Source: Podarcis bocagei | Taxonomy: Eukaryota | NCBI GenBank assembly: GCA_964188305.1 | Contig: OZ076892.1 | Strand: one strand, 5' to 3' | Length of the DNA: 64,000 nucleotides | Shown: positions 19,588 to 63,872 of the stretch, piece after piece | Layout of the letters: every line of letters starts with the position of its first letter | How positions within the stretch are numbered: position 1 is the stretch's first letter | Translations under genes and position numbers: made by a program | The notes under the pieces: model-generated | Databases searched by the model: none | Told to the model about the DNA's origin: nothing | Seen by the model: only the letters and a program-made list of their open reading frames with translations

Positions 19588-19724
19588 TTGCTTAGTTGTT
19601 AGAGCATGAGACTCTTCGTCTCAAGGTTGTGGGTTTGAGCCCCATTTTTTTATAAAAGATTCCTACACTGCAGGGGGCTGGAGTAGTTGATCCTCGTGGT
19701 CTCCTCCAGCTCTACAATTTTGTG
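19588..19724 (+). mobile_element. SINE with tRNA-Lys(CTT)-derived head and CR1 3' tail
   Basis: Head AGAGCATGAGACTCTT..TCTCAAGGTTGTGGGTTTGAGCCCCA; tail AGATTCCTACACTGCAGGGGGCTGGAGTAG...CTCTACAATT. Confidence 0.75.
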
Positions 19725-20520
19725 CGTCTCTGTGTTTGGTAGTATGGAGTGGTATCTCTGTGAAATATTTGCTTTGAGATTTATGAGTAGATGCGGTTCT
19801 GCTCATGCTGGGAAGATGACTGATAACCCTACCGGGATCAGAGAGGAAACTTTTTCTCTCTTAGTCCGATTACTAGAGAACAACCCCTGTGGGTTTCATT
19901 GCATCCTTTTGTTGTTTGTGGTTTGGTTTGTCTTGTCTGTCTGTCTTAGTTGAATAGAGCAGACTTCTGGGCAGGCAGCGCTTATGAGATGCACCTGTCT
20001 CTCTGCTTGGAAGTGTACTGTGGTCTGGATTGAGGCGGATGATCCAGGAAGGGCTGAGCGGAATGATCTATCCTGGGTTCCACATTGTTCCACAAGCAGA
20101 GCAGGTGCCTGGCCGGAAGGCGACCGCTCAAGCAAATCTACAATGGTATTAGCCCTTCATTTTGTCCAGGGCCACAGCCTTGCTCCCTCCCCCCATACAC
20201 AAATGCCCCTCTGCATTTCTCAGAGGCTGTATTTAGAGAGCTCTGTTTCCTCAGTCCTCTTGCACAACTCTTGTGAAACCTCTGGGAGCGATGAAAACCT
20301 GTCTGTTAGTGAAACATCTGTGGCAAGTTTGTGGCAAATGGCCACTCAAGAGAGATGTATTTCTGGATGTCACTGGTCTAATAGCTGTCCCCTTTTGTCA
20401 GAGTAGTTCTGGGAATTGAAATTATATGAAGGTGGTGGGAAGGAAGTTAATAGTGTTGCCAGACCTTCAGATCTGTCCTGAAGTCTCCTGGTTTGCCTGG
20501 CCCCCTCCTGGTGGCAGGTA

Positions 20521-20795
20521 AAGGTAAAGGTAAAGGGACCACTGACCATTAGGTCCAGTTGTGACTGACTCTGGGGTTGCGGCGCTCATCTCACTTTATT
20601 AGCTGAGGGAGCTGGCTTACAGCTTCCAGGTCATGTGGCCAGCATGACTAAGCCGCTTCTGGCGAACCAGAGCAGCACACGGAAACGCCGTTTACCTTCC
20701 CGGCTGAGTGGTACCTCTTTATCTACTTGCACTTTTGACGTGCTTTTGAACTGCTAGGTTGGCAGGGACCGAGCAACGGGAGCTCACCCTGTTGC
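20521..20795 (-). mobile_element. Sauria SINE, 5'-truncated
   Basis: Body matches 8943-9301; TSD GTGGCAGGTA (20511-20520, 20796-20805). Confidence 0.92.
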
Positions 20796-20834
20796 GTGGC
20801 AGGTAGAGGGCTTGAATAGCCAGGAGGATGAGAC

Positions 20835-20874
<40 letters not shown>
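20835..20874. repeat. (AAT)n microsatellite
   Basis: Read directly. Confidence 0.95.
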
Positions 20875-21534
20875 TTGCTTGCAAATGTCAGCCTGGCAGG
20901 AGCTGGCTGCAAATTATATAATAGACACTCTGTGGGGTCTGCTCCCCTCTCCCAATTTACCTCAGTCTGTGATACCTGCTCCAGGAACATCGCCAAGGGG
21001 TTGTCAACAGAGCCCCTCGCCAAACTACAGTTCCCAGGAATCTTTGGGAGAAGCCACGAGCAGTAAGAGTGGTTTTCAAAAACCCAGTCTAAACTTTTGT
21101 CACACGCCCAGTTGCTTCCGCTTCATGCCTGCTGTTGCTCTTATCTCGTTTTCCACACTCAGACAGTTGACCCTGTAGCTGCTGTTGTCAGTTGTACCTT
21201 GTCCTCCCTTCCCCTGAGCAAAAACACAAGTCTGAAACAAAGCCATTTTTTTATTATTATTAAACAACAACAACCGAACATCACACGCTGCCTGGGTCAG
21301 GGGTGTGTGAGGATGGATAGCTTGAGCCAAGCGGCAGAAGCCTTTGCATCTTGTTATGGTCATTACGGGTTTCTGAAAAATCTTGCACAAAACCGGGAGC
21401 TTGCGTTCCAGATATGTCCTTTTGCCATAGTCGCTTGCATGATGCGAAAACAAAAAGGAGCAACCGAGTTTCTGTGTATTTCCTTTTGGAAAGTTGAATC
21501 TTGTGCAATGGGCTTCCAAGGATCAAGTGGTTAC

Positions 21535-23554: not shown

Positions 23555-23754
23555 NNNNNNNNNNNNNNNNNNNNNNNNNNNNNNNNNNNNNNNNNNNNNN
23601 NNNNNNNNNNNNNNNNNNNNNNNNNNNNNNNNNNNNNNNNNNNNNNNNNNNNNNNNNNNNNNNNNNNNNNNNNNNNNNNNNNNNNNNNNNNNNNNNNNNN
23701 NNNNNNNNNNNNNNNNNNNNNNNNNNNNNNNNNNNNNNNNNNNNNNNNNNNNNN
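23555..23754. other. assembly gap (200 N)
   Basis: N run. Confidence 1.
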
Positions 23755-23869: not shown

Positions 23870-25999
23870 TACAGTATAAGGTTGGGGGAGAGAGGCGGTG
23901 AACTGACACAGGGGACAAATAAAAGGGGGCGCCTTCACCCCGGTATGGCCCGCCCTGCTGTCCTTCCTTCTCCCTTTCCTCTGTGCCTGTGAGCAGATTG
24001 TACTTCCGAGCAGCAGCAGCAGGTGAGAGCAGTTCTCTGGCCAGCCTGGGAGAAATCCAAGTTGGTCCCACACCCTGTCTCTTCTCAGGCTGTGGATTTG
24101 ATCTGGCAAGAAGCGTTGGGATCCCAGTGGGCAACCGATGAGAAAGAAGGCCGAGCTGCTGCCAGAGGCAAGTGAGCGTAATTCATTCCTGTTTGTCAGG
24201 ATTTAATGAAACTCTTTCTCTCCCCGGGGATGCGGGGCGTGCTGAGAAGCTGGGATTGGCTTTGGTATCGCCCAGCAGGAGAGGAGAGGAGCTTTCTGGG
24301 GGAGAAGAGAAGAAGAGAGCGGAAGCCCTTAGCCAGGCTTCACCCAGGCCTCCTTCGTAGGGGGTGTCCTTCCGCTTGGGGCAGTATCTCGTATGCTTTG
24401 TGAGGAATCCCCTCTGATCGTGCCATCCGGTCATGCAAGGAGCAGCAGGGGCAGGCCTTGTTAGAAAAACGTTTGGTCCCCAGGCAGGCGGAATCCATGG
24501 GCTTTTAAATTCTCATCCTTTAAATTCACCCACCACCACCCCTTGGCAACTGTCTCCAGCTGAAAAATTCAGTGGGAAAGGGAAACTGAAGTTGTCACAG
24601 TTGGCTTTACATATCCAAGGTCAGGAACGGAAATCGCGCAAGTAATTGTGAGCAGTCGTTCATGGCTGTCTGCAAATCCTACGTACATAAACGGTTACGT
24701 TACTTTCTGCACTGCATTTGACGTTTCCCTTCCATTGAAATTGCGCCACGAATTGCATCGGTTTCAGCCATAGTGTATTGTGAGACCAGTAACATAGGTT
24801 TCAGGGGAAGCCAAACTGTTGTCATTTTTATTTTATTCTATTGTTTTATATTTTTCTGAACCACTTTCCTAGAACTTTTGTTAAATAAACAAACAAATAA
24901 ATAAATAATAAACCAACCAACCATAGCAGAACAAAAACAGCGCTAAGCTAAGGGTGGAAATCGCTGCATCCTTACATCCCCACTTGCACCCAAGGCCGTT
25001 CTCTGTGGGGTGAAGGAGCTGTACTGCATATTGCGGCTAGGTCTGTTACCTGGAAATGATATTCAGTGTCCCTATCTCCTCAGCCCACTTTTCTTTTTAA
25101 AAAACCAAGTTTCTAGCTCTCAAAACTGCTGTGCAAAGTTTGCAAATATCTCCATGCCTGTCCCTGTTTTTTCCATTCTCTTCTATGAAATCTGCTACCT
25201 TCCTTTCCGTTTTTTCCACCCTGGTTCCAAGCCCAACATTAAATGGGCTCTGTGTTCTGTTACCTGACTTCCTCCTTTCTCGGGGCGGGGGGCATGTTAA
25301 TTTTGTCAATAAAGGCAGGATCACCTGTTGGGCACCACCTACTCCTTCCAATTGCTCTGTGTAATCAAGTCACACAAACAGGTGTGCGCCAGAAAGATGG
25401 AGGATAAAACGGCTCCATACAAGGGACAAAAGCCACATGTGACAGGAGAAGGGCAAGAAATGAATTGTTTCCCAGAGTTCCTAACAGATCTGACCTGGGC
25501 TGAAAATTTGTAGAGCCTAGGAAGCTGCCTTATACCTAGTCAGATTATTGGTCTGTTGAGTTCAGTACTGTCTATGGGGAATCTGTGGCCTTCCAGATGT
25601 TGTTGGACTACATCTCCATCATCCCTGACCATTGGCCATGCTGGTGGCAGCTTGTTGGTTGTTGGAATCCAGCAACATCTGGAGGGCTGCAGATTTCCCA
25701 TCCCTGGTCTGCATAAGCTGCCAAGACTCTCTGGAGTTCTAGATAGGACCCTCTCCCAGCCCTGCTTGGATGTTCCAGGTACTCAGATGGTATGGACTTT
25801 GGGTTTTTCCTTAACACGGTGGTGAATCTGATGCCAAGCATAGGGAAAATAGACTGGAAGCTCACTGGTGTGCCTCTCTCCTTGGGGAAGCATCAAATTT
25901 TTCCACTTAGCAAGAGGCTCAAAGTGACTAGTCCCTGGTGAATCGCTCTCGCTCTGGATTAAAATGGTGTATGGTCTTGCAAAATGGGTTTGCCATTGC

Positions 26000-33449: not shown

Positions 33450-34890
33450 TGGAGGGCCCATTACCTTCCCACAAATAAGTGCATAGACCTTGTGAAGCAG
33501 TCTAAATACCACATGTGAAGCAACCACTGGGAGCGGCCATCAACTTCATGCTTGGCTTGTGAGTTTCCTCAGAGACATCTGGCTGGCCACTGTTGGAAGC
33601 AGAATGCTGGGCTAGGGGGAACCATGGTCTGATCCAGCAAAGCTGTTCTTGCATTTAGCTTTGTGTATTCCTGGCCCCGTAACAGATGGCCACGTAGCAT
33701 GCTGCCAAATCTGCCTTCTCTCTCTCTCCATCTCTTGACATCAGGCGTTTCCATCCTTTTCCATGGTAGAAGAATCCGTCTTGTTGCCAGGACTTAATTT
33801 CCAAAAGGAAAAATGCCAGGCAATGCTAGTCCCAGGGCAGAGGTGTTGTCTGTCTACTTCAATCTACCATCGTGGCGTAGTGGCCAAGGAGGGGTGAGGC
33901 AGGGTGGAAATCACTCTGCGTAGGCCCTGACTATCCACATGGACAAAGGTCCACCACACAGGCAGAATTGCTTCTTTTTGCTGAATATGAAGTCTCTTTG
34001 CATGTTTAGAACATGGTCAACCTTTCCATCAGGCTGCAGAGCAGAGCGGATTCTTCCCCCAAAGGATCCTGGGAACGTAGTTTACCCCTCACAGAACCAT
34101 TTCCAGCACTCTTAATAAATTATAGGTCTCAGAATTCTTTGGAGGAAAGTCATGCACTTTCAATGTATGGTGTATCTGCAACCTGGGATAGATTTATCTC
34201 TAGGGGTTGCCCGCAATGTTAAGTTCTACTCAAGAGTAGATTCACTGAAATGAATAGACATGACTAAGCCAACAACCACATCATACATGTAAAGCAATGT
34301 TACACCACTTTAAACAGCCACAGCTTCCCCCAAAGAATTCTGGGAGCTGAGGTTTGTGAAAGGGGCTGAGAGTTGTTAGGAGAACCCTATTCCTGTCATG
34401 GAGCTACAGTTCTCAATCCCTCTTCATAGGGAACTCTGAAAACGGTAGCTCTGTGAGGAAAACAGAGGCCACCTTACAACTCTCAGCCCTCTTGATAGAC
34501 TACAGCTCCCAGAATTCTGTGGGCGAAGCTGTGGCTGTCATGGTAGTGCTTTATATGTATGATGTGAATGTGGCCTAAACTAGGTCCATTCATTCCAATG
34601 GGTCTACTCTGAGTAGGACTTAGTTGGAAACTGTTATCTGTCTGTACTCCTCTGGGAGCACAGAGCAGCTGTTTCTACAGAGATTCACTGACTGGGAAGG
34701 GGAGTTTGTGGGAATGTATGAAAATCAGAGCAGCGGGGAGTAGGGATTGCCAGCTGCAAGAGAGAAACAAAGGCCTTGATTACTGTATGGAAGCCAGTGA
34801 AAAGAACCAGATATTGTCGCACCCCAACTTCCATCAGCTCCAGCCAGCATGGTCAGTGGCCAGGGACAGTGGGAGTTGTAGTTTAGCATG

Positions 34891-34950
34891 GCAGAGGCTT
34901 AGACTAGATGCCCCTTGGGGTCCCTTCCAGTTCTACAATTCTATGATCCT
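34891..34950 (+). mobile_element. isolated CR1 3' terminus
   Basis: GACTAGATGCCCCTTGGGGTCCCTTCCAGTTCTACAATTCTATGAT. Confidence 0.75.
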
Positions 34951-37599
34951 GTGAACATGTTAGAGGGCCCACGGGCTCCACCCTGTCCCTCTGTTTCTGG
35001 TGTGTCTCATTCACTCAGCCAAAGAGAGAGAAACTTCCACGCTTGCCCAGATCGAGAAGTGTGAGTCAGCAGCCGAACAAAGAGCCCCCTATCTGCGCCT
35101 GTGGGCAGCTTTTGACGCTTCTCGGCTCCCCGGCTCGTGGCCTGCAAAGAATGCCAGGTCACGCTCCCTTTCCCGGAGGGCACCACTGAGTCAATGGCAT
35201 CCGCGTCCCACCGTCCTTCAAGAGTTCCATTCTTCACCTCTCCGCTCAGAAAATCTGACCCCTAGAAATTCTGGCGCTGCGAGCCTCCTCCCAGCCCTGC
35301 CAAACTGGAATGTTTGCAGTACAGTAAATTTCTCCCTCCTCGCCCCCTTCCCCAATTCAGAGAGAGCTGTGTGGGCAGTGCATAGCCCAGGCACTGAGCT
35401 CCAACCATCCCATTCCAGTAGCGCTCAGCCTGTAAGGAGTCAGTGGCAGGATGGGTGCAGCAGGAAGGATCTGGTCCGTGCATGGTATATCCCAGCCTAA
35501 ACTACTACTACTGTCGTGTTTTCCTTGAATTTGAAGGATGGTGTTGCCCAGGGAAAGTGTGGAGAAGGGAAGGGGGGATTCTTTGAGAAGTTATGGCAGC
35601 TGTCATTCTGCCAGACGGCGGTTGATGATTGGCCGGGATCCGGGAACTGCTGCATTACAGGGTGGGCGGAAATGTCTAACAACATGTAAATGACATTGTC
35701 ACCTTATTAATCGAATACTTAGAGGGACTGGCAGGCAGGCTTGGCTGGGATCAGAGCAGAGAGAGATGGCGAGTGATTGAGGCCTGTCGAAAGTGGCCGG
35801 CACAGCAATACATTCTTCTCCATAGCACGCGATTGCCTGGTGGTTCAGCGCTAGAGTTCTTTCCTACATATAGCGGTGCCAGGGTATGGGTTCAGGCTCT
35901 GCACAGGAACTCCTCATTGCCGATACATCGTATATTGTTTCCCCTAAGAAATATTGCGTCCCATGGAAGGTGAACCTCCATGAGCTATGCTGCTACTGCT
36001 TCATAGCTGACTCACTGATGGAGCGCAAGAAGTTGTACCATTGGTCCATCCATCTCAGCATTGTCTGCACTGATTGGCAGATCAGACCCACTGAAAGTAG
36101 TGGCCATTAACTTAGATTTAGCTGTGCAAAAAGCTAGTTGAGTGCAACCTGGTATGGCTGTGTACACACCAAATTTTTGAAGCACAAGACTTCTTCCCCC
36201 CAAATAATCCTTGTTTACCCCTCTCAGATTTCCAGCACACTTAACAAACTAAAATTCTGGGGACTCTTTTGGGGAAGACTCTATGGCATGGGAGTGCCCT
36301 GTGGGTGCTTTCAGACTGTGCTATTTTTTCAGATGGAATCAGTCATATACTAGCAAATTCAGATTGTTGAAGCTCTTGTGCAATAAGCCTCCTTCCCCCA
36401 AAGACCAGACTTCTATGCGATAAGGAAAGTGACAGGAAAACGCAGTGGGAAGTGTGAGATGATGCTTGCCCACAAATCTGAATCTGAGGAATCCTCATTA
36501 ACCAGCATCACCCTAGATGGACCTTTGGTGTGCTTTCAGACAGGGGCTTAATTTGCAAATAGATTTGCTGAGATACTACAAGCAGGTCATTGGCAACATG
36601 GTGTTTGTTTGTTTTTTAAACTTATCAGATCTCTCTGTAAAAGAGTATGGCGCTTAATGCCAGTGATGTTGGGTACATGCTGCAGAAAAGCTTGTGTGAA
36701 TGAGCAACACCCATTTCACAATAAACCTCTGTCTGGAAGTAGCTTTGATATGGCCCAGGAAAGCCTTTTTTTTTTAATGTTGCAAGACTACAGATTAAGA
36801 TAGAATTGGTACGATCTAAATTAACCTCCGGGGTGGACGGTGTCAAATCATTTGAGATTTGTTCGTGTGTTGCCCTGAATGCTGTAGCCCGGTCGGCAAC
36901 CAGCCAACCACAAAGTGGAAGCATCACTAGGCTTGGGGGCAAGCCTGAAGTTTGCAAAAGTGCAAAATGTTTTAGGAAAAAGGCCTGAGCTGGAAGGCAA
37001 CTGCCCAGCAGCTCAATGCGTCTGCTCAGTGGCCACGGAATGCTGACAAATTGATTGGGGGGAAATTGGACTCCCAACTCGCATCACCCCAAATGTTTTC
37101 CCATGCCAGCTGAGCTGGATGGGAGTTGGACTCTGACAACATCTGGATCGCTGCCAGTTTCCCATCCCTGGACTGGATGATCTTTACGTGCTTTGTGTCT
37201 TCTACCATTCTTGGGGTCCAGGTCTCAATTCCACGATCACTTCCATCCTGCCTGTTCCATATTCACAACTGTGACTGTTTACGCATCATGAGCCACACTT
37301 GTGCATCCAAAGTGGGGCACAGGGGAGGAAGGGCGCCTCCCTTTTGCCACTCCACCTCTGCTGTACACGGCAAGGTTGACCAAAGAGTGTTAAGTGGGCA
37401 ACTGATCTGCATCAAGTGGCCTTGGCCGGCCGAAGACTTTCCTTGTCATTTCGTAGCATTGTTAGCTGCTGCACATCAAGCGCCCTGTTGGGAACATCTG
37501 GGCAAGAAGCAGGATGCCAAACGTTCCGCTTCCTATACCTGCGCACACATCCTGCATCCCTTTCCCGGGATCTATGCTTGCTTCGCCTCCTGCACTTGC

Positions 37600-41700: not shown

Positions 41701-44072
41701 CTTTCTTTCTTTCTTTCTTCTTTTGCTTCTCCTCCCCCTCTAGGGAACTGAAGGCGGCTTGGAAAAAAAGGATCTGCAGCCTTTCCTGTGTATGCGCTCA
41801 ATCCCACTTTCACCTCCAGCAAATGAGTTGGACAGGTCTTGGAATCACTTCCAAAACCTGTCCATGGCTTTTGCCTGGAGAAGACTGGACCATTCCATGG
41901 ATGTACAGTATTTGAAGCATGTGGCTTCCCTATAGAATGCTGGGAACTGTGGTTCACCCCTCACAGAACTGCAATTCCCAGGCCCCTTAACAAACTATAG
42001 TTCTCGAGGTGAATGGTGTGAATATGCCCTATAGGCACTGCCAGGCTGCCTCTATTTTCAGGTGGGATTTGGTCGTATACCAACAAATTTGGATTGTGCA
42101 ATTAAAGTTGATTTGGAGCTCTTGTGCAACAAATCCACTTACCCGATTGATCAGAAAAGTGTGATAAGGAAAGTGAAGATATAGTGGAAAGTGTGGGGTG
42201 ATGCTTGCCTTTATCCTCTAGCTTCCCCTGACCCAATCATCATTTAATGTCATCTAATAACTCTCACAAGCAAAGAAGCATGAATGTCCAATAAACAGGT
42301 CATCTGGAAGCAGTCTCCAGGCTTCAGTCCTCCAGACAAAATGAACAAAATGAGGTGAGACCTCTCCCAAACTGCATTCAGTTCTCTTAAAAACAACTGT
42401 TTCCTCCAGCTAAAAGTTCAGAGCTCCCTGTGAACTAATTTATTATTATTCCCATTGCACAGATGGGGAACTGAGGCTAATAGACAAGGACTAGTTCTCA
42501 GTGGTTCCATAGCAGGGTGGAACTTGAAGACAGAAACTGATCTCTCCTTGAAAAATGACGTATTCTTATGCTTGGAGCAGCAACTGGAAAGGGAAAATAA
42601 TGGGTTCCTTTGTGGCCAATCCAAAAGCATGGAATTGAGTAGGCTCTGTGAGTGGAAATGTCAGGAATCCTGACCTTCTGCCCCTTCAGTGTCTGTACGA
42701 AATTCTTATATCTGGGTCTCCCAAAGTAAGAGACAAGCTTCGCTTTGGGAGCTATGGACAGTTGCCAAGGGAGAGGCAAGTTTCTTCCCGAGATACCTCC
42801 TTCCCTGCCCACTTCAAATAGTGTGTGCTGTGATTGGCCAGAGTGCCCACCCATCCACACCCGTTCAATTTCAAGGTTGGGGCTGAGGTACACACCATAT
42901 CTTTAAAGCACACGACTTTCCCCCAAAGCACCCTGGGAGCTGTAGTGTATCCCACAGAGCTACAATTCCCAGCACCCTCGACAAGCCACAGGCTGTGTAC
43001 ACACCATACTTTTAGGCTTTGGAGGGCAGGGGTGGGCTCTCTTGTTTGAGAGTTGTTGTTTTTTCCTGTTAAGGATGCTCTCTTAGGGACCTTCTAAGTG
43101 CATCTTTTCCTTTCTTTTTTGTTGTTGAAAAAAATTGCCGCATGGAGTCAATTCCATCTGGCCGACTCCAGTTGTTGGGCAGCCAATTACCCCACAGAAA
43201 CTCACAAGCAAGGCAACTCCCCTGTCCTTTGTACTCAGCACCTTCTCTTCAGAGAAATCCTGCAGAAGTAGCCATGTCGATGAAGGCTAATGCCTGCCCC
43301 CCAGGAAATATTATCTACTCTTTTTTTAAAAAAACAAATCAAATGCTGCTTATGAGAGGGGCCATCGCAACACCCTCTGGCGACAAATTCCACAGATTAG
43401 TTATGCATCGGGTGAAGAAATAACTTTGCCTTGTATGTCCTAAGCCTACCGTCAATCAGATTCGTTGGATGAGCATGAATCCTAGTGTTTGGGGAGAGAA
43501 TGAATAATTGCTCTGTTCACTGTTCTCGCTTTTCGGGCCAAGCCTCTTATATTGGACTAATTGTGGAAGATGGGCAGTGGGTTGGCGCTCCGCCTTCTGG
43601 CTCCAACGAGGCTCCCAATGGGAAGGACCTGGGAGGTCTTCGCGCGCCATCCCTGGCTGCGGTCCATGAATCTCCCCTGGGGAGGTTCATTGCATGCCCT
43701 CCTTTTTTTTGCAAAATTAGTCAACTATGTTCCGCTTTAATTATTTCCGAGGATTCTTGCGGTGCGTGGGTTAGCGGGAGCGGAATAAATGGCCTGGTGT
43801 TTCTGGTGGGGTGCAAGCAGGCAATCCCGGAGGGTGGGCTAGCAGGAGGGGCCTCAGGTTTGGACTGACAAGCATCTGCAGAGCTGTCTTGGGTGTGTGA
43901 TGGGCTGTTGACCTTGTCGAGGGGAGTCTGACCTTGGCCGTCACAGCCGGCTGCGCAGTAGGTGCCACAGAGACCCTTTGAGCAGAGGGGAGGCGGGTGG
44001 GAGAAGAGGAAGGAGCTGACACAGCATTAAACCGTAGCACCCCCCTCCCCTCCCACTACACACCAGAAGTAT

Positions 44073-44174: not shown

Positions 44175-44426
44175 CCTGGGGTCAGGTCCCAGCCACAGAC
44201 CCCTTTTTCTTCCTCAGCTCAGTTATTGATACAGATATTGGGGGTGGTGGAAAGAAAATACGGGCCAGCGACATCACAGCTGCGGCATGCAGAGGCCGGA
44301 AACGATCTCTGCTAGTCAGAAGTGTGTTTGCTCCCCGTCACATTTCCAGACAGACCCAGTGCTTACACGGCAAGTATGTGTGGATGGAGGACAGGCACAG
44401 GATGTTTTCCTAAAAGCCTGAGCAAG

Positions 44427-44547
44427 CATCAGGTGGTGCAGTGGGTCATTGCGTCTGGCTGTTAACCAGAAGGCTGGTGGTTCAAGCCCACCCAGGAACA
44501 ACTGTGGGCAGTATCCCTGTGTTGCAGGAGGCTGGACTAGATGACCC
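44427..44547 (+). mobile_element. SINE with tRNA-Asn(GTT)-derived head and CR1 3' tail (3' end lost)
   Basis: GGCTGTTAACCAGAAGGCTGGTGGTTCAAGCCCACCCAGG matches tRNA-Asn; followed by TGCAGGAGGCTGGACTAGATGACCC. Confidence 0.75.
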
Positions 44548-44687
44548 AAAGAACTGTAATTCACCTCTCACAAAACTGCAATTCCCAGCACCTTGGCAAA
44601 GGTTCCAGGATTCTTTTGGGCTTGTGTGCTTTAAATGTATGATACATGTCCATATACATGTCACACTAGTTTGGAACTTAACTCTAT

Positions 44688-44696
44688 GAGATAGAT

Positions 44697-44731
<35 letters not shown>
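44688..44731. repeat. (AGAT)n microsatellite
   Basis: Read directly. Confidence 0.95.
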
Positions 44732-44732
<1 letters not shown>

Positions 44733-45792
44733 GAAATTCCTGTGCTATAAGACTGAGTACTACTCGGATAGCATTCAGTTGAATCCTTGGTTAAAGCCCC
44801 AAGCAGAAAGAGCTCAGCTTCTCTCCGAATACCTCCCCCCCCCACCAAATAAGTTAATAAATAAATACATACACAACTCCATTCTCAACAGGACCTCGGC
44901 ACCAAAGTTATATAGCTGGGCCTGATCATTACTCCTATGGTCAAACATTTCAAATTCTGTGCCAAGCGAAGCTAGCGCTGCTTATGGGAAGCCTGGGAAT
45001 GAATTTATGCAGGTCAGTTAAAAAAAGAAAGAAATCTATGCAAACTTTGTTGCTTGCATAAACATACTTTGTTTGCATGCTGTGCATCTAAGCTTGTCAT
45101 CTCTGTGTGCTTCTCTGCAGAATTGGGAACATACTTTCCTTGGAGGGGAAAGAATGGCAGGGAGCAGGGAGGAGCAAAGCGGAGGTGGGTGGTGTGGGGG
45201 ACGTGGTAGAGGGGGCTGACAAAAATAAACTGGCATTTCTCAACATTTTAGAGGTTGAGTCTCCCCCCCCCCCTTGCCCCCAACCTGGCTGCCTTCTCCC
45301 AACACAGTTCCTCCTAACTGCAGAGGGAATGTGCAACCTCTCTGGCATGCACATATTTCTGGGTAGGGTCACAAGTTTGGTCCATCTATACCGGAAGCAG
45401 CTTGGACCCTGCAGTCTTCATCTGATGTCCTCCTCTGTATGCCCTGTCTGAGGAAAGTGCAGAGCATGCCTGCATAACATGACTTTGGGTGGTGGTCTCT
45501 CCATCTGTGAAATGTTCTCCTTTGAAAAGTGTGCCTCGCACCATCTTTTTCAGTTTTTCAGCTCCAGGCTAAGATCTTTCTGTTTAGCCAGGTCTTTGGT
45601 TCATTAATGTCGCCTCCTATGGCGGTGATTATCTTTTGGTGAGGCGGGTTGGACTTGGCCCATAATTTGTTCCTGGATAAGGAGGTTGTGCATTTTTTAA
45701 TTGCCAGTGTTTTAAATTTTCTCTGGTTTTAAATTGTTTTGATGTATTGCATTTCATTTTTGTCTAGTCATCCTTAGACTGGGGTGGGGGGT

Positions 45793-49193: not shown

Positions 49194-49195
<2 letters not shown>

Positions 49196-51556: not shown

Positions 51557-51698
51557 NNNNNNNNNNNNNNNNNNNNNNNNNNNNNNNNNNNNNNNNNNNN
51601 NNNNNNNNNNNNNNNNNNNNNNNNNNNNNNNNNNNNNNNNNNNNNNNNNNNNNNNNNNNNNNNNNNNNNNNNNNNNNNNNNNNNNNNNNNNNNNNNNN
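51557..51698. other. assembly gap (142 N)
   Basis: N run. Confidence 1.
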
Positions 51699-53915
51699 TC
51701 ATTGCGGGAGTGTAGCCTGTTGTTTTTGGTAAGTGTGTTGTCTGACTTTTTTGTCTGTGTTTTATTTGTGTTTGTGGAAAATAGGTGAGATTCCTGTGGT
51801 GTTGTTGTTGTTGTGCTAGTGGTGGTTTTCAGCATTGTCAGTTTTTCCTCCTCCTGTGAAGTGGGTATTTTGTGGGGACCTCAAGTTATTTCGAAATGTG
51901 GCCCCTGAGCCCAAAACGTTTGGAGACCCCTGACTTGGCGAATCACACAGTCCTGCTCCAATTGATACCTTTTGTATGTTGGTCTGTATCTGAGAGCCTG
52001 GAGCAGACAAGGACTCAGTTTGCACATCACCCTAAACCTTGGCTTAAGTGCTACATTTACGAGCTGGAACAAGCCAGAGCAAAGCCTTGGGCTCGCTTGC
52101 TCTCTCCTCCTCCTGCCGAGAAAAGGATTTTGCCAGCATTTTGTTCCAGTTTCAAGAATCTTGGCTTGTTGCATCGTATCAGATCGTTGTTTAAAACATG
52201 CTCTGGTTAGTTAAACAAGCCAGCTTCATAACTCAGGGTTTGAAATTGGTTTGTTATAAACCATGATCTCTGGTTGGTACAGCACAACGAGCCAAGATTC
52301 TGTGAAACGGAAATTAAACACGGGCAAAGGGGAATTGGGGCGAGAGCCAGTGTGTGAACTCAAGGCTTTGTCTGGACTCACTTTCACTGGTGCATGTCAT
52401 TCTAAGCCAGGGGTGGGCCAGCTTCTCAGGGTCAAGGGGCCACATTCCCAGGGGGAAACGATTGGGATCACACACAGTAGGCAGCAAGCAGGGCCAAAGC
52501 AAAAAGTAGGTGGGGCCCAAAAGTGTGGAAGCTGCCCACTAGGGCACTTGGGGCACTGTTCCACCAAGCTCACCCATCTGCCACCTGCCTGCCTTCTTAC
52601 CTAGAATCAGCTTCCTTCTCCTTAGTCTCAGTGTTTTCCTAGAAGACGAGGATGACAGACAAAATTGGCTCTGCCTCCTCTTAGCTGTATGTGCTTTCTG
52701 TCTTCTTCCCTACCAGTCCCAATGGGCACCATTCACCGAAAGAAAAAATGTATTGGGTCCCCTTCTTTTATGTTTCCTCTCCTCAGAGGCGTAGGAAGGT
52801 CAGGTGGTACCCGGTGCAGAGAATTTCTTGTCACGCCCCCCCCCCCCCGCCCCACATTGTTTTTTGCCTGCTGTGGGTTTACATAATTTCATATTTTCTT
52901 ACAAAGGAATGTGGATTCTGAGCCTCTGATAACAAGTAGGAGACTATGGACAGATGCTTAAATCTACAGGATGGATTGTGTTTTGGCTTGTGTTATTTTA
53001 TTTAAATTTATTGTTTATTTATCTAATAAAATTTATTTATATATAAATAAAATTTATTTATTTTAAAAAACCTGCAAAGTGGTTTACCAAAACAAAAAAC
53101 AAACAAAAAAACACCACAGCAGTAATATCAAGAGAAATTAACAGTCCTACTTTAAAACATACAAAAGCTAAAATATTAAGATTAAAATTACTTCAACTTC
53201 CTAAGCATCTAGGTAATCTTGCCTAAAGAAGAATGCTTTTAGCAGGCGCCTGAAAAGAGTGTAGCAAAGGCACGTGCTTTGTTGAAATTTCAGCCTTCAC
53301 GACATAGGAAAACGGCCAAGTAAACAGCTGTTTTCGTGGAGGAGGGTCAAGATATTAACTGATATGCATGAAATTTCATATGTAGCTATATAATCCCTAG
53401 TGTAGAAAGATAAGACCTTTGAAGCAAGCATTTTTTTAAAAAAAGTTTTTTATGAACCGCCCTAGTAGGGCAGTCATTGTTCCTTGATAATTTGTCACCC
53501 CCCTCCATGATGGCACTTGGGGCGCCCCCCCACCCCGTTCGTACGCCCCTGCCTCTCCTCTCCCCGTTACTCATTCAGCATCCATTGTTTTTCCCTCGGT
53601 CTCTCCAACACAGACACACACTCCTTCTCTACCACTTTGTTTATTCCCCTCTTTCTTGCATTCTTCTTTCTTGCATTTTATGCTGTGAAATGCCCTGAGA
53701 TCTATGGATGAAGGGCAGTATACAAATACAAACAAACAAACAAACATTCAGTGATTCTCTTTCCAGGCTTATGAAACCTCTAAACCCGAGTTTCCTAAAC
53801 GTGGGTCTCCAGCTGTTTTTGGACTACAACTCCCACCATCCCTAGCTAGCAGGGATGATGGAACTTGAAGTCCAAAAAAACAGCTGGAGACCAGGCTCTA
53901 GATGGTTTAGATTTA

Positions 53916-54829: not shown

Positions 54830-54936
54830 CTGCTCGTTTCTACAGCACATACACTAAAAGTGGAATGACGCAGAGAAGATTAGCCTGGCCGCTGCGCAAG
54901 CATGACACGCAAATTCGTGGCGCGTTCCACATTTTT
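54830..54936 (+). pseudogene. RNU6: U6 snRNA processed pseudogene
   Basis: Full-length colinear match to vertebrate U6 with about 15 substitutions in 107 nt by hand count; ACAGAGA box changed to GCAGAGA; upstream is SINE, with no PSE/TATA. Confidence 0.95.
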
Positions 54937-55649: not shown

Positions 55650-56390
55650 CCAACAGTGTGATGCAGCAGGAGCAGCAGCAAGAAAGAAAGAAAGAAAAAA
55701 GCTAGTGCTATTTTAGGCTGCATTAGCAGAAATATAGTGTCCTGATCAAGGGAAGTCATAGTACCACTCTGTTCTGCCTTGGTAAGACCACACCTGGAAT
55801 ACTGTGTCCAGTTCTGGGTGCCACAATTTAAGAAGGGTGTTGACATGGTGGAACGTGTGCAGAGGAGGGAGACCAAGATGATCAAGGGTCTGGAGACCAA
55901 GCCTTATGAGGAACAGTTGAAGGAGCTGGGTATGTTTAGCCTGGAAAAGAGGAGAAAGAGAGGAGATCATAGAATTGTAAAATGGAAGGGACCATGAGGA
56001 TCAACCTTCTGCAGTGGAGGAATCTTGTGCCCAGTGTGGGACTTTAACTCACAACCTTTGAAGATGGCTATCATATCTAAAAGGCTGTCACATGGAAGAT
56101 GGAGCAAGTTTGTTTTCTCCTGCTCCAGAGGATAGGACCCAAGTCAATGGATTCAAGTTACAAGAAAGGAGATTCCGACTAAACATCAGGAAGAACTTTC
56201 TGATGGTTAGAGCTGTTTGACAGTGGAACGGACTCCCACGAGAGATGGCGGACTCTCCTTCCTTGGAAGTTTTAAAGCAGAGATTGGATGGCCATCTGTT
56301 ATAAATGATCTTGTTGAGATTCCTGCATTTGCAAGGAGTTGGGCTAGATGATACTCCAGGTCCCTTCCAACTCTACAATTCCACGATTCT
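55650..56390 (+). mobile_element. CR1 LINE 3' fragment
   Basis: [19 protein letters not shown]...[17 protein letters not shown]; 3' end GGTCCCTTCCAACTCTACAATTCCACGATTCT. Confidence 0.95.
55965..56065 (-). mobile_element. 5'-truncated tRNA-Lys/CR1-tail SINE inserted antisense within the CR1
   Basis: Minus strand: AAGGTTGTGAGTTAAAGTCCCACACTGGGCACAAGATTCCTCCACTGCAG...GGTCCCTTCCATTTTACAATTCTATGATC. Confidence 0.6.
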
Positions 56391-57287
56391 ATATCCATGG
56401 GTTTGATGAGAATTATTCTTTTTCCCAGTTTATTTCCCACCTTCACCATCTGGTTCCAGGGCATATTGCAGCAATTTCAAAAAATCAATGATGTACGATC
56501 ATAAGAATAAGGTGGGTTCCGAAAGCATATACCTCACATGTCAAAGGCCACGTCCCTTGATTTGGTGAGAACCTGCTGCTGTTTTGCACACCTTACTGTT
56601 AAGTTGCCCTACTAATAATGATTTAAAATAGCTCTGTGCGGGGACCTGCAACAGCCCTGCAATCTCACAATGTGGGTCTCACCTTCTCCTGTGAGTTATA
56701 TTCTGTTGTGTTAGCTCTTGATCCAGCCGCTTGCACATTTTCACATGATTGTTATTTTCTTGCTTCGTTGGCCATAGGGTATTTAACCTCCGTAATGATA
56801 ATACATTCATGGATTGTGTCAACACTTGAATTAAACCTTTGGTTCTCTAGTGCTTTCACATGAAGGGATCATGGGCTGCTTTGATTGAGGTGGCACTAGA
56901 AACTGCAGCTTCTAGTGCATGTTAAGTAACAAAAGCTTTTTCAAGTGCCTTCGTTCCTTTCAACATCCATTGTTTTCTGCGGCCTCTAGATCGGGAAGAT
57001 GTTCTTGCAATCCTGCAGGTGTGTGTACAGTTATCGTGGGTAGGAATCGTTGTGTATGCTGCGCTGCAAATTACAAAATGAAAACCTAGGTGTCTATAAC
57101 AAGCTTTCCACCATATAAATTCATGCCCTGGTAACCTCAAGGTGGTATTCAACTAAGTTGTACCCACAGCAGACTCATTAAAACCATTGAACTTGGCTAA
57201 GATAGGACCAGTAATTTCAATGGGTCTACTCGGAGTGAGACCTAGCTGAATGCTACCCCCTTGCTTACTGAATCTTTGGACCTGGGC

Positions 57288-57772: not shown

Positions 57773-57987
57773 AATTTATTTATTGCACACCACCGTTATC
57801 TTCGAAGGTGCTCAAGGTGGTTGTACAAGGTTCTCCACGTCTGCATTTCATCCACACAACAACCCTGTGAGGTAGGTTAGGCTAAGAGATGATGACTGGC
57901 CCAAGGTCACCCAGTGTTAGCTTCATGGCTGAGTGGGGATTTGAATGCTGGTCCCCCAGGTCATAGTCCAACACTCTAACCATTACT
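57773..57987 (-). mobile_element. older CORE-like tRNA SINE
   Basis: CACAACAACCCTGTGAGGTAGGTTAGGCT...GGCCCAAGGTCACCCAG...GGATTTGAA. Confidence 0.8.
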
Positions 57988-58230
57988 TCAAAGAATTCTG
58001 GGAGCTGTAGTTTCTTAAGGGTGCTGGGAGTTGTTAGGAAATTCCTATTCCTCTCCCTCTATTCCGTTCCCAGAGTCCTTTAACAGTCAGTCCCTTTCCC
58101 CAGGGAACTCGGGGAATTGTAGCTCTGTGATGGGAACAGTGGTCTCCTAACAACTCTCAGCACCCTTAAGAAACTACAGCTCTTTGGAGGAAGTCACGAT
58201 TGTTTTCATAACATAATGCTTTAAACATGT

Positions 58231-58539: not shown

Positions 58540-58582
<43 letters not shown>

Positions 58583-60174: not shown

Positions 60175-60220
<46 letters not shown>
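60175..60220. repeat. (AAT)n microsatellite
   Basis: Read directly. Confidence 0.95.
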
Positions 60221-60221
<1 letters not shown>

Positions 60222-60454
60222 GGTTTGTCCCAACATTTCCATTCGCGCAATCAGATTGCTTAAAGAGCGATGGAAAGAATGTTTGTCACTCTTTGAGTTG
60301 TGCACAAGGGTGGAATAAGGATTCTCCCATGTGTCGGTGGTAAGAATACAGAGCCAGGGGGTGGTGTTAATTCTGGGTTAATCCATCTAGAGTGCATATA
60401 TGTTTTTGTATTTCTAGTTGTGGAATGGGATGGGAAGAGGCATAGGGTAACAGA

Positions 60455-61184
60455 GAAGTGCAGAGTATTTGAGGACCGGGACATTTGCAGGGAAACCAAA
60501 ATGCTTGTTTACAAAGCTATTGAACTACCAACCCTACTGTATGCTAGTGAAACATGGACCACTTATAAACTCCATCTCCAACTCCTCAAAAGATTCCATC
60601 AACGATGTCGCCGAAAAATTGTACATATCACTTGGGAAGACAGGCGAACTAATACCAGTGTACTGGAAGAAGCAAAGATCACCAGTGTCAAAGCAATGAT
60701 TCTTCAACATCAGCTTCATTGGACTGGTCATGTTGTGTGGATGTCTGATTATTATCTTCCAAAGCAACTACTCTATTCTGAACTTAAAAATGGAAAGCGT
60801 AATGCTGGTGGTCAACAAAAGAGGTTCAAAGACTGTCTCAAAGCAAATCTAAAAAAATGTTGTATAAACACCAACAATTGGGAAACACTTGCCTGCGAGC
60901 ACTCCAGTTGGAGAACAGCCTTTACCAAATGTGTCAGGGCTTTGAAGACACTCAAACTCAAGATGCAAGGGAGAAACGTGCTAAGAGGAAGGCACACTTG
61001 GCAAATCCACAACATGATCAACTCCAGCCCGGAAACCAATGTCCCCACTGTGGAAGGATGTGTGGATCCAGAACTGGCCTCCACAGTCACTTATGGATTC
61101 ATTGTTAAAACCATGTTTATAGAAGACAATCTTACTTGGCTGCAAGTGATTGCAGAGGAGGAGGAGGAGGAGGAGGAGGAGGAG
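60455..61184 (+). mobile_element. RTE-clade LINE 3' fragment (non-BovB, C-terminal zinc finger)
   Basis: TKMLVYKAI..PTLLYASETWT, RFHQRC.RKI, WTGHV, LPKQLLYSEL..GKRNAGGQQKRFKD; shifted frame ends CPHCGRMCGSRTGLHSHLWIH; (GAG)n tail. Confidence 0.92.
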
Positions 61185-63504
61185 TATAATGGAACAGAAG
61201 GCAAGGTGAACCCAGGACACTTACTGTCCATAAAATAAGTCAGCCTTTTTTCTTCTTGTTGTTGGAAGACAGCAGGGATGGGGAACATGCAGCCCTCCAG
61301 ATATTGTTGGACTCAACTCCCATAACCTCTTACCATTGGCTTTGCTGGCTGGAGCTTATGGGAGTTAGGGTTAGGGTTCCAACAACATCTGAAAGGTCAC
61401 ATACTCCCCATCCTTGGAGCCAGGAATTGACAGTCTGTCTGTCTTGTGGAGAAAAGCATTGAGCTCTCTCGATGTTTTGTGCATGGAGGGGGAGGAAGAA
61501 TTTAGCTTGTCTCACCCTTTTGCTCAGTTGCCATAACGTCTAAAAAAGAGAGAGAGAATGCACATGAAGTTAGCGCGAGTGTAGGATCGTTCAGGTGCTG
61601 TGCCAAATATGCATTTTGGGAGCAGGCCAGCAAGCTGTCTTCCCTACCAGCACGCACACTCTCTCTGCACCTTGTGCATTCTGAGTCACCTCTGAACAGC
61701 CCTAAAAACTCTGTATGGGGATTTAATTGCAAATGACTGATCTAAGGTGGCAGATATAGTTGTCCGAAAAGGAGGCGACTGGGGCATTTTAACTGCTGCA
61801 GCTTTTTGTGTCATAGTCCTCTTTCTGTAGGCGGTCTCCCAGTTCCCGTAACGCCATATATTGGCCATTGATTAGCAGTCGATTCAGGGACAGGCGAAAT
61901 AAATGACTGCAGAATCAACCCCTGGAACTTTCTGCCACTGGTTGTGGCGCTACCAGGTTGATACTTGCTTTGACAGCTTCATATTATTCGCCACGGTGTC
62001 TAAACAGAATCTCCATGCTCAGGGGCAGTCTGCCCTCTAAGGCCAGTGGCTGGGCAGCGGTCAGCGGTGGGGTGATGCTACCTTGGCATGCCCTGCTTCT
62101 GGGATCTGAGGAGGCTCCTGGGGCACCTGCTAAAGGTGCCCTCTTCTGCCCGACTCTCAGAAGGCATCGAGACCCTCGTCTCTGCCTGATCCTCTTTGGC
62201 GTTTTTGCTTGGCCTGCGCCATCTCCTGCCCCTTTTGCAGCTGCCTCCAGCCGCCGGCCTCAAGGTGTGGGTTCCCCCTGCTGCCTCTTTCCCCGAGGCC
62301 AGCCTGGCACAGGCAGGAGAAAGGCACACAGAATATCAATCAGGTGCCAGCGCAGAGGTCAGAGCGGTGGGGTGGGGGAGGGGGGCTTTGCTTCAAGGCC
62401 GAGAGCCGCGCGGCAGCGTTTCATGCTCCCTGCCTCCCTTTTGTAGAATATCAGCAGCCCTCGTGAGCTGCATCCTTGATGCGCCCGACGCCTCATACCG
62501 GAATCTCATTGCAGCAGGCGCAAGGATGGAGCCTGAGATGGAGAGGGCGGTGTGTGTGTGTGTGCGCACACGCTGGGTGTGTGTGTCAGGAAATGGAGGT
62601 AGTGGTGGGCAATTTTGGAAGCTGGACTGTTTTAGAAGGGGTGGGGGAGCGAACTCTGCAGGTCCACTTTGAATTATGGCATCAAAGCACCAGGGCAGGT
62701 GGCTGCTTGCCATGCAGGGCTCCTCCTGCTTCTTAAGAGTTGCGGAGAGGAAAGAGTTGGGGCAGGGATGGTGGCAGAAGGCCGCCCTCGCCCAAATTCA
62801 CTTCATGTCTTCACCTCCACAGCTGTTTGTTTGCGGTTGGAGTGGGAAGCTCTCTTTTCCCTTATTGATCTGGCAACCTGACCTCCTTTTGAGGTTTGTC
62901 TCCTCACACCGTAGCAGTGCCTTTTCACAGCGGCTTGATGTACAGGAGATGCAAGCAGGAGGAAAAGCTTCATTTGCCGCCGGGGGTGTCACCCGGTTAA
63001 ATGAAAAGGCAGATCCACGCAGCATGCTTTCGAAGGCCACCCGATGCATATTTGAAGCACATGGCTTCCCCCCAAGGAATCCTGGGAACTGCAGTTTGTG
63101 AACGGGTGCTGTGAATTGCAGCTCTGTGAGTAGGAACCTACCGTTTCCAGGATCCTTTGGAGGGAGCCATGCTCTTTGAATGTGTGGTGTAGGTCCACCC
63201 AAAATGTAAAAGGCTTTTGTGGGGGTATGGAGCACAGAGGAGGATGCCCACAGCCTCTCTGCTTGACTTCCCCCAAGGAATTGTGGGAGCTGTAGTTTAT
63301 TAAGCATGGCAAGAATTGGAGCTACAGTTCCCAGGGGGGAATCATGTGCTTTTAAATGTTCACTGGGTGTGCTTCAAATGGATCTGCCCAATGTTTACCC
63401 TACTCTGAGTAGTCCCAGTATAATCAATAGATTTTAATTAGTCCTGTCCATTGGTTTCAGTGGGCTTGTCTTAGATGAAGCGTTTACCCCAGTTTGAGAG
63501 TGAT

Positions 63505-63872
63505 GGCCAGAACGGCAGTGTAGAGTTTTGGGCTAGAACTTGCATGACCAGGGTTCAAATTGGAACCACCCTGGGTAGCTCAGCTGGTTACAGCATGCTT
63601 CTGATAATGCCAAGGTTGCAGGTTTGATCCCTGTATGGGACAGCTGCATATTCCTGATTTGTAGAATGATCCTCAAGGTCCTTTCCAACTCTAAAGTTCT
63701 ATGATTCTACGATTCCCCACTTAGCTGGGAAACTCACTGGGTGACTTTGGGCCAGCCACTGCCTCTCAGACTAACCTGCCTCACAGGGTTGTTGCGCAGA
63801 TAAAATGAGGAGGGGGAGAAGCATATACAAACCACCCCAAGCTCCTTGGTGGGATATAAATGCAATAAAAAT
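63505..63872 (+). mobile_element. older CORE-like SINE interrupted at 63561-63714
   Basis: GACCAGGGTTCAAAT resumes as CCCCACTTAGC...CTCACTGGGTGACTTTGGGCCAG...CCTCACAGGGTTGTTG. Confidence 0.75.
63569..63714 (+). mobile_element. SINE with tRNA-Ile-derived head and CR1 3' tail
   Basis: TAGCTCAGCTGGTTACAGC...CTGATAATGCCAAGGTTGCAGGTTTGATCCCTGTATGGG matches tRNA-Ile; tail ATATTCCTG...GGTCCTTTCCAACTCTAAAGTTCTATGATTCTACGATT. Confidence 0.8.

What the first reader, a model, noticed from the sequence alone, without database searches (positions are those of the whole stretch)
19588..63714. One CR1 tail, three different tRNA heads: a modular SINE system
Seen: four short elements share the same 3' segment (ATTCCTGCAYTGCAGGRGG.TGGACTAGATGA.CC...GGTCCCTTCCAACTCTAC.ATTCTATGATT, each copy partial or diverged), which also ends the CR1 at about 56316-56390. 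Their 5' ends are different tRNAs: Lys-CTT (19588-19645, plus a more diverged partial antisense copy at 55965-56065), Asn-GTT (44427-44500) and Ile (63569-63642). The linkers between head and tail also differ. Established: SINEs combine a Pol III head with the 3' end of a partner LINE. Inference: in this lineage the CR1 machinery has repeatedly fused different tRNAs to nearly the same tail breakpoint, either by independent SINE births or by head swapping. I cannot tell whether these families are already catalogued.
Basis: partly seen in the sequence, partly recalled or inferred. Interest (0 to 1): 0.75.

Follow-up and report, generated by a model that had tools for sequence, protein, structure and literature searches.

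The report
Lizard CR1-tailed SINEs, three tRNA heads

Summary
All three tRNA-like matches in the 64 kb window have anticodon loops reading CUU (Lys), GUU (Asn) and GAU (Ile). Each lies 12-20 nt upstream of, and on the same strand as, a copy of the CR1 3' end. That CR1 3' end also closes a 5'-truncated CR1 at about 55690-56395.

- **Lys:** a second, 5'-truncated Lys-type copy sits antisense inside that CR1. It shares diagnostic changes with the first copy.
- **Ile:** the unit splits a MIR/Squam3-like SINE cleanly, so head and tail inserted as one piece.
- **Asn:** raw reads and contigs from four coded lizard species were laid on the element. Depth was about 340-390 reads across the Asn linker against 1-4 on the unique flank, and hundreds of contigs spanned head to tail. 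The Asn junction is therefore multi-copy.
- **Ile, from the same reads:** 265-301 reads carry an Ile-like head end before the same tail start.

These are old, dead copies of CR1-mobilised tRNA SINEs, not chance juxtapositions or one-off chimeras.

The kind is known: tortoise Pol III/SINE (Lys), TguSINE1/PittSINE (Ile, then Asp by head swap), and tuaCR1-SINE1/Squam2 (Ala). Whether these three families are in Dfam or Repbase could not be checked. Head swapping versus independent births is unresolved.

First readers noted the same trio in three other windows of this genome. The assembly gaps touch none of the elements.

The parts
19581..19735 (+). Lys-type SINE copy 1. Head is about 19581-19645 (anticodon loop CUCUUCG). 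A T7 run plus ATAAAAG follows at 19646-19657. The CR1-type tail is 19658-19735, with a decayed ATTCTRTG end.
   Evidence: Rfam tRNA 30.6 bits, with alignment. Tail profile E = 7e-21. The tail folds into the CR1-type hairpin, but the z-score is not significant.
34886..34956 (+). CR1 3'-end fragment without a tRNA head. It abuts a mir-5408-type hairpin repeat. It is most likely a severely 5'-truncated CR1 or SINE insertion.
   Evidence: Tail profile E = 7e-19; sequence. It ends in ATTCTATG ATCCTGTG.
44429..44552 (+). Asn-type SINE copy. Head is 44429-44500 (anticodon loop CUGUUAA), linker 44501-44512, and the first about 40 nt of the CR1 tail 44513-44552. The rest of the tail is missing; another repeat follows from 44553.
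   Evidence: Rfam tRNA 35.5 bits. Reads and contigs: depth rises at 44429-44433, contig pieces span 44429/33-44547, and 581-646 reads continue past 44547 with the remaining CR1 tail.
55690..56395 (+). 5'-truncated CR1 LINE fragment holding the ORF2 C-terminal region and the 3' UTR. The SINE-shared tail is 56318-56393. The fragment is interrupted at 55968-56063.
   Evidence: Translations. The ORF piece has 2758 relatives, mostly in birds; UniRef names those in Grus, Hirundo and Limosa 'reverse transcriptase'. Tail profile E = 1e-20.
55968..56063 (-). Lys-type SINE copy 2. It is 5'-truncated within the anticodon arm, ends exactly in ATTCTATG, and is nested between the codons for ..RGD and M.. 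of the CR1 ORF2. It lacks 9 nt of the 5' arm of the tail hairpin.
   Evidence: Alignment to copy 1, sequence, translation of the interrupted ORF.
63560..63713 (+). Ile-type SINE copy. It starts with 9 extra bases (63560-63568). Head is 63569-63642 (anticodon loop CUGAUAA), linker 63643-63649 and CR1 tail 63650-63713. The tail has a 12-nt internal gap and ends ATTCTATG ATTCTACG AT.
   Evidence: Rfam tRNA 24.9 bits, below the gathering score. Tail profile E = 1e-13. Alignment to an intact host-type SINE shows a clean 154-bp insertion.
63500..63850 (+). MIR/Squam3-like host SINE split by the Ile-type insertion. Host parts are about 63500-63559 and 63714-63850.
   Evidence: Global alignment to the uninterrupted copy at 57790-58030 on the minus strand.

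Best explanation
The elements are decayed copies of three families of CR1-mobilised, tRNA-derived SINEs in a lizard genome.

Each unit is 125-155 bp in these copies. It consists of a tRNA-derived head (Lys-CTT, Asn-GTT or Ile-GAT type) carrying the internal Pol III A and B boxes, then a short family-specific linker, then the last about 75 nt of the CR1 3' UTR. That tail contains a hairpin and ends in ATTCTRTG repeats.

Inferred mechanism. Pol III transcribes a master copy. The CR1 reverse transcriptase recognises the shared 3' hairpin and octamer repeat and copies the RNA into a nick by target-primed reverse transcription. This sometimes stops early (the 5'-truncated Lys copy) and leaves little or no target-site duplication.

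Inferred origin of the heads, held with low confidence. The different heads were most likely acquired by template switching of the CR1 enzyme from a tail-bearing RNA onto a tRNA. The breakpoint would be fixed near the 5' edge of the part the enzyme needs.

The copies in this window are dead. Their B boxes are CpG-decayed, the Lys copy has a T7 run, and several tails are deleted or cut.
For: Shown:
- Isotype-specific anticodon loops in the Rfam alignments.
- Six copies of the tail, one of them ending a CR1 ORF2 remnant.
- The tails end in ATTCTRTG units. PMC5729268 gives this octamer and the hairpin as typical of amniote CR1.
- The Asn head-linker-tail is multi-copy in four coded species. Depth across 44497-44512 is about 380-390 (X23) and about 340 (X24), against 1-4 on the flank. 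X15 and X13 laid 1443 and 973 contigs. Contig pieces span 44429/33-44547 at 81-85% identity. 149-155 reads share one linker consensus (agreement 0.7), which points to amplification from a master copy rather than independent chimeras.
- 265-301 reads carry a consensus before the tail start that aligns 20/28 to the Ile head end plus linker.
- 127-143 reads carry the CR1 LINE body before the same point (23/30 to window 56288-56317).
- Two Lys copies share changes not seen in the CR1 tail.
- The Ile unit and Lys copy 2 are clean nested insertions that begin in the head and end in the octamer.

From the literature: the same architecture and head exchange are published for passerines, tortoises, tuatara and Squam2.
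Against: - Only the Asn family was tested directly with reads. Ile rests on a low-agreement (0.42) loose-end consensus plus one copy. Lys rests on two copies.
- The Ile head scores below Rfam's gathering threshold.
- The hairpin folds are not better than shuffles (z = -0.5 to -0.8). Two tails (Lys copy 2 and Ile) lack the 5' arm of the hairpin.
- No target-site duplications could be shown.
- No transcription or activity data exist.
- 20 kb of Podarcis lilfordi (L001) held no copy.
- The depth figures are biased by the 80% likeness cut-off against this one diverged copy.
Confidence: 0.85

Rival explanations
1. One ancestral CR1-tailed SINE gave rise to the others by head swapping. The reverse transcriptase switched template from the SINE RNA to a tRNA, so the tail and breakpoint are inherited rather than re-acquired.
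For: The breakpoint in the CR1 tail is the same to within about 10 nt in all three families: ATTCCTGCA follows the linker in Lys, Asn (read consensus) and Ile. This is the published precedent for TguSINE1 to PittSINE.
Against: Two tail variants are seen. GATGATCCTC occurs in Lys copy 1, Lys copy 2, Ile and the local CR1. GATGACCCTTGGGG occurs in the Asn copy, the fragment at 34886-34956 and the read majority. This hints at more than one CR1 source. The evidence rests on one or two decayed copies per family.
Confidence: 0.45
2. The three families arose independently from CR1 RNA. The common breakpoint is imposed by function or mechanism: it marks the minimal part the reverse transcriptase needs, or a pause or switch site at the base of the hairpin.
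For: The linkers differ between families. There are two tail variants, and the local CR1 shares the variant of the Lys and Ile tails. CR1-tailed SINEs arose separately in turtles, birds and tuatara.
Against: Three independent events ending within a few bases of each other is improbable without a hotspot, and no hotspot is demonstrated. Variant sharing could also come from later exchange of tails.
Confidence: 0.35
3. The units are one-off chimeric retrocopies (tRNA joined to a CR1 3' end by template switching, like U6-L1 chimeras), or chance insertions of truncated CR1 next to tRNA pseudogenes. On this reading they are not amplifying SINE families.
For: Only one Asn copy and one Ile copy are present in the window. 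The tail fragment at 34886-34956 shows that very short headless CR1 ends do insert. A U6 pseudogene lies 750 bp from the CR1.
Against: The Asn junction and linker are shared by hundreds of reads and contigs in four species. The Ile-like junction consensus appears in 265-301 reads. Two Lys copies share changes. All three tRNA-like hits in the window sit directly upstream of a tail, with a chance probability of about 1e-8.
Confidence: 0.05

Closest known systems
TguSINE1 and PittSINE of passerine birds (PMC5729268)
   Same: tRNA head (Ile in TguSINE1) joined directly to a CR1 3' end with a hairpin and AUUCURUG repeats. Two families share one tail but have different tRNA heads, explained there by template switching.
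   Different: Different host lineage and CR1 subfamily. Here there are three heads (Lys, Asn, Ile-GAT type), different linkers and possibly two tail variants. No family consensus or tail phylogeny is available here.
Tortoise Pol III/SINE (Cry I) with PsCR1 (table in PMC3747384)
   Same: tRNA-Lys derived head plus a CR1 3' end. This is the classic SINE/LINE shared-tail pair.
   Different: It belongs to turtles.
Squam2 of squamates and tuaCR1-SINE1a/b of tuatara (PMC7116210 supplement; PMC10702118)
   Same: CR1-tailed tRNA SINEs of lepidosaurs. Squam2 is reported in all squamates.
   Different: They are described as having a tRNA-Ala head and a body: 270-284 bp in tuatara, and 190-350 bp for the three squamate SINE families taken together. 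The elements here are simple head-linker-tail units of 125-155 bp with Lys, Asn or Ile heads. No Ala-type head was found in the window.
CORE-SINEs, V-SINEs and DeuSINEs (modular SINE superfamilies)
   Same: Different Pol III heads are combined with a shared downstream module.
   Different: In those superfamilies the shared module is a central domain of unknown origin. Here the shared part is simply the partner LINE's 3' end.

Membership tests
tRNA-derived SINE | 5' head derived from a tRNA, with internal Pol III A and B boxes | tested here: met
   Rfam tRNA matches cover the D arm to the T arm. They score 30.6 and 35.5 bits (above the gathering score) and 24.9 bits (below it). The B boxes read GGTTTGAGCC, GGTTCAAGCC and GGTTTGATCC, which are CpG-decayed forms of GGTTCGANNCC.
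tRNA-derived SINE | Short, non-coding, dispersed in many copies with the same head-body junction | tested here: met
   Met for Asn: about 340-390-fold depth over the linker against 1-4 on the flank, and hundreds of contigs spanning head to tail in four coded species. Only indirect for Ile (loose-end consensus) and for Lys (two copies in the window).
CR1-mobilised SINE | 3' end homologous to the 3' end of a CR1 LINE of the same genome | tested here: met
   The tail profile hits the end of the CR1 ORF2 remnant and all SINE tails; alignment. Reads show the CR1 body upstream of the same tail. Relatives of the ORF piece are named reverse transcriptase in birds. Assigning the LINE to the CR1 clade rests on the tail signature and established knowledge, not on an RT-domain phylogeny.
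CR1-mobilised SINE | Hairpin (reverse transcriptase binding site) in the tail | tested here: inconclusive
   The CR1 tail and Lys copy 1 fold into the expected hairpin, with a GUUGG/CCAAC to GCUGG/CCAGC change on both sides. The z-scores are -0.8 and -0.5. Lys copy 2 and Ile lack the 5' arm.
CR1-mobilised SINE | ATTCTRTG octamer repeats at the very 3' end | tested here: met
   Ile ends ATTCTATG ATTCTACG. Lys copy 2 ends ATTCTATG. The fragment at 34886-34956 ends ATTCTATG ATCCTGTG. The CR1 ends ATTCCACG ATTCTATA. The read consensus past the cut Asn tail ends CAATTCTAT. The end is decayed in Lys copy 1.
CR1-mobilised SINE | Mobilised by the CR1 enzyme (retrotransposition in trans) | not testable with these tools
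   Only indirect signs are available: a 5'-truncated copy, clean nested insertions ending in the octamer, and no clear target-site duplication.
Squam2 | tRNA-Ala type head and a body region between head and LINE-derived region | tested here: not met
   The anticodon loops read CUU, GUU and GAU. The linkers are only about 4-12 nt. The Squam2 consensus itself was not available for alignment.
Functional tRNA gene | Complete cloverleaf including the acceptor stem | tested here: not met
   ARAGORN finds none, even at relaxed thresholds. The Rfam matches stop at model position 63 of 71.

The most novel reading that the evidence does not exclude
In this lizard lineage one about 75-nt CR1 3' module was captured at essentially one breakpoint by at least three different tRNAs (four if Squam2's Ala head uses the same module), and from at least two CR1 tail variants. 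That would point to a mechanistic hotspot for template switching at the 5' edge of the reverse-transcriptase binding hairpin, which would amount to a rule for how CR1 makes SINEs. On this reading the three families are also not yet catalogued.
Probability: 0.2. Interest if true: 0.5.

Novelty: new member of a known kind. Interest (0 to 1): 0.3.

Why it matters
If the three families are uncatalogued, adding them would improve repeat annotation of lacertid-type lizard genomes. It would also supply presence/absence markers. Three heads on one CR1 tail, with the partner LINE in the same genome, would be a convenient natural system for asking how SINEs are born: head swapping against repeated capture, and why the breakpoint is fixed. 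This extends the two-family passerine case. It does not change the picture of SINE biology.

Tried and rejected
- ARAGORN on the window, and with thresholds relaxed to 70%, gave no usable tRNA call. At 70% it gave only a spurious Val|Cys call overlapping the Ile head. Isotypes were therefore read from the Rfam alignments.
- Pfam on the CR1 ORF pieces gave no family.
- The ESM Atlas feature search gave only weak leads (0.77, PF09004-bearing clusters).
- I tried to sample more lizard genome through CR1-derived proteins. Only one Podarcis lilfordi protein was named among the hits. Its 20-kb locus, L001, holds a CR1 tail but no SINE of these types. The second search returned bird proteins only.
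- A metagenome scan for 'B box, 8-38 nt, ATTCCTGCATTGCAGG' returned one bacterial contig (L002) with a genuine bacterial tRNA and a chance 16-mer. It is irrelevant.
- RNA folds of the tails are not better than shuffles.
- I looked for the missing 3' part of the Asn tail downstream of the neighbouring repeat. The profile finds nothing there.
- U6 to CR1 fusion as direct evidence of template switching is rejected. The U6 copy ends in its own T run about 750 bp upstream of the CR1 fragment.
- Only one read-laying run was allowed, so the Ile and Lys elements could not be tested directly.
Full report
**What is in the sequence**

The window comes from a lizard genome. It is rich in mir-5408-type hairpin repeats and MIR/Squam3-like SINEs. 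Earlier notes of this scan on the same genome also call it a lizard.

Rfam finds only three tRNA-like stretches in 64 kb:
- 19590-19645 (30.6 bits)
- 44438-44492 (35.5 bits)
- 63576-63634 (24.9 bits, below the gathering score of 29)

The cmscan alignments place the anticodon loops as CUCUUCG, CUGUUAA and CUGAUAA. None is a tRNA gene. ARAGORN rejects them even at relaxed thresholds, and the acceptor stems are not matched. The heads do not collapse into one consensus. The only similarity between heads is 21 nt of the T arm between Lys and Ile.

**The shared tail**

The two tail motifs occur 4 and 3 times against 0.28 and 0.02 expected. A profile built from the tails finds six copies and nothing else above noise:
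- One ends a 5'-truncated CR1 at about 55690-56395.
- Four follow tRNA-like heads: Lys at 19658-19733, Asn at 44513-44550, Ile at 63650-63712, and the antisense Lys-type copy at 55964-56024.
It has no head and abuts a hairpin repeat.

The ORF remnant of the CR1 reads ..[26 protein letters not shown] | M..DGASLFS..RFRLNIRKNFLMVRAV. It has 2758 relatives. Those in bird genomes are named reverse transcriptase.

The tails end in ATTCTRTG units. PMC5729268 gives this octamer, together with a hairpin, as the signature of amniote CR1 3' ends.

All three tRNA-like hits lie 12-20 nt upstream of a tail on the same strand. By my arithmetic the chance of that is about 1e-8.

**Are they units that moved as one piece?**

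- The Ile element (63560-63713) splits a MIR/Squam3-like SINE exactly between GGTTCAAA and TCCCCAC when aligned to an intact copy at 57790-58030. It starts at the tRNA 5' end, after 9 unexplained bases, and ends in ATTCTATG ATTCTACG AT.
- The antisense Lys-type copy (55968-56063) sits between the codons for RGD and M of the CR1 ORF2. It starts inside the anticodon arm and ends exactly in ATTCTATG. A 5' truncation with an intact 3' end is what target-primed reverse transcription produces.
- This copy shares CACTGCAG and GTTGATCCTCNTGG with the full-length Lys copy, and these differ from the neighbouring CR1 tail. So the Lys type has at least two related copies in this window.

**Is the junction multi-copy?**

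I laid window 44280-44680 against two raw whole-genome runs (X23, X24) and two sets of Logan contigs (X15, X13). These come from four coded lizard species. The likeness cut-off was 80%.

Depth (sum of both mate directions):

| Region | Depth |
|---|---|
| Unique flank | 1-4 |
| Head | about 780-860 |
| Linker, 44497-44512 | about 340-390 |
| Tail | about 830-910 |

- X15 and X13 laid 1443 and 973 contigs. The listed pieces span 44429/44433 to 44547 with 16-22 differences, which is 81-85% identity.
- Reads whose alignment stops at 44496 (149-155 per run) continue with one consensus, GATGGCTGTGGGCAGGATTCCTGCATTGCA, at agreement about 0.7. This is the same linker and tail start. That pattern fits amplification from a master copy and does not fit independent chimeras.
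- Reads that run past 44547 (581-646 per run) continue with ..GGGGTCCCTTCCAACTCTACAATTCTAT. The family therefore carries the full CR1 tail, and this copy lost its end.
- At about 1.3-fold sampling of a roughly 1.5 Gb genome, this corresponds to a few hundred copies recognisable at 80% likeness to this one diverged copy. That is a lower bound.

The same table shows what else precedes the tail start:
- 127-143 reads carry TGGCCATCTGTCATGGATGCTTTAGCTGAG. This is the CR1 LINE body, matching window 56288-56317 at 23/30.
- 265-301 reads give a lower-agreement consensus (0.42) that aligns 20/28 to the 3' end of the Ile head plus its linker, ending at the same junction.

That is indirect but independent support that Ile-headed units are also numerous.

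First readers reported the same Lys/Asn/Ile trio in three other windows of this genome. I treat those notes as unchecked agreement.

**What it is and how it works**

These are old, dead copies of CR1-mobilised tRNA-derived SINEs of three head types.

- Shown: the architecture, the partner LINE end in the same genome, insertion as units, and multi-copy status (direct for Asn, indirect for Ile and Lys).
- Inferred from the established model of SINE/LINE pairs: Pol III transcription starts from the head's A and B boxes. The CR1 reverse transcriptase recognises the shared hairpin and octamer repeat. Integration is by target-primed reverse transcription, with occasional 5' truncation.

The copies here cannot be active. 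Their B boxes are CpG-decayed, Lys copy 1 has a T7 run inside it, the Asn tail is cut, and Lys copy 2 and Ile have internal gaps in the tail.

Divergence suggests old families. At least 11 majority differences occur in 115 nt of the Asn copy, and copies are 81-85% identical to each other. I did not date them.

**Head swapping or independent births?**

This is unresolved.

- Similarity to CR1 starts at ATTCCTGCA in all three families. Parts of the linkers resemble the preceding CR1 bases GCTGAG, so the breakpoint is common only to within about 10 nt.
- The linkers differ: about 4 nt after the Lys acceptor strand, about 12 nt in Asn and about 7 nt in Ile.
- Two linked tail variants exist. GATGATCCTC occurs in the local CR1, both Lys copies and Ile. 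GATGACCCTTGGGG occurs in the Asn copy, the headless fragment and the read majority.

This hints at more than one CR1 source with one breakpoint, and so at a functional or mechanistic constraint. It rests on one or two decayed copies per family. I put head swapping from a common SINE ancestor at about 0.45 and independent capture at about 0.35.

**Comparison with what is known**

The kind is well described:
- Tortoise Pol III/SINE: tRNA-Lys with PsCR1. TguSINE1: tRNA-Ile with CR1-X (table in PMC3747384).
- PittSINE arose from TguSINE1 by acquiring a tRNA-Asp head, explained by template switching (PMC5729268).
- tuaCR1-SINE1a/b: tRNA-Ala head and CR1 tail, 81-83% similar to squamate Squam2 (tuatara supplement). 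Squam2 is reported in all squamates (PMC10702118).

The elements here fail the Squam2 description, which has an Ala head and a body. I found no paper in the held library describing Lys, Asn or Ile heads on a CR1 tail in lizards. Dfam, Repbase and SINEBase could not be queried, so 'uncatalogued' is not established.

**Verdict**

The interpretation as a modular SINE system is partly supported. I rate novelty as at most new members of a known kind, and interest as modest.

The assembly gaps (23555-23754 and 51557-51698) are at least 3.8 kb from every element and play no part in the finding. I did not test their continuity and filled in no N.

Noticed in passing
window 54830-54936 (+): A full-length U6 snRNA-like sequence (Rfam 76.6 bits, model positions 1-105) that ends in TTTTT. 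It has many differences from the consensus and no obvious TATA box at about -30, so it is probably a U6 pseudogene. It lies about 750 bp upstream of the CR1 fragment and is not fused to it.
   Followed up: partly
window 6431-6514, 25596-25679, 34821-34882, 53812-53884, 61301-61388: Palindromic hairpin repeats that match the Anolis mir-5408 precursor model below threshold on both strands. This is a MITE-like repeat family that is abundant in the window.
   Followed up: no
window 44553-44643 and 41944-41994: Another multi-copy repeat, with about 45-240-fold read depth, directly follows the cut Asn tail. Either it inserted into the tail or a deletion joined the two.
   Followed up: partly
window 55968-56024 (-) and 63650-63713 (+): The Lys copy 2 and Ile tails both lack the 5' arm of the CR1 hairpin: 9 and 12 nt are missing at the same alignment position. 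The two copies belong to different head families. This could be deletion at a hairpin after insertion, or subfamilies that move without the full hairpin.
   Followed up: no
window 19646-19657: Lys copy 1 has TTTTTTTATAAAAG where Lys copy 2 has the tRNA acceptor 3' strand plus linker (ACTGGGCACAAG). This is a Pol III terminator-like run inside the element.
   Followed up: no
window 63560-63568: Nine bases (TTGGAACCA) lie between the break in the host SINE and the tRNA-Ile 5' end. They may be a decayed target-site duplication of TCCCCAC or a 5' leader of the family.
   Followed up: no
window 44690-44735: A (GATA)n microsatellite lies about 140 bp downstream of the Asn element.
   Followed up: no
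L002 885-940: The metagenome scan returned a bacterial contig with a genuine bacterial tRNA followed by a chance match to the 16-mer that starts the CR1 tail. It is unrelated to the finding.
   Followed up: yes
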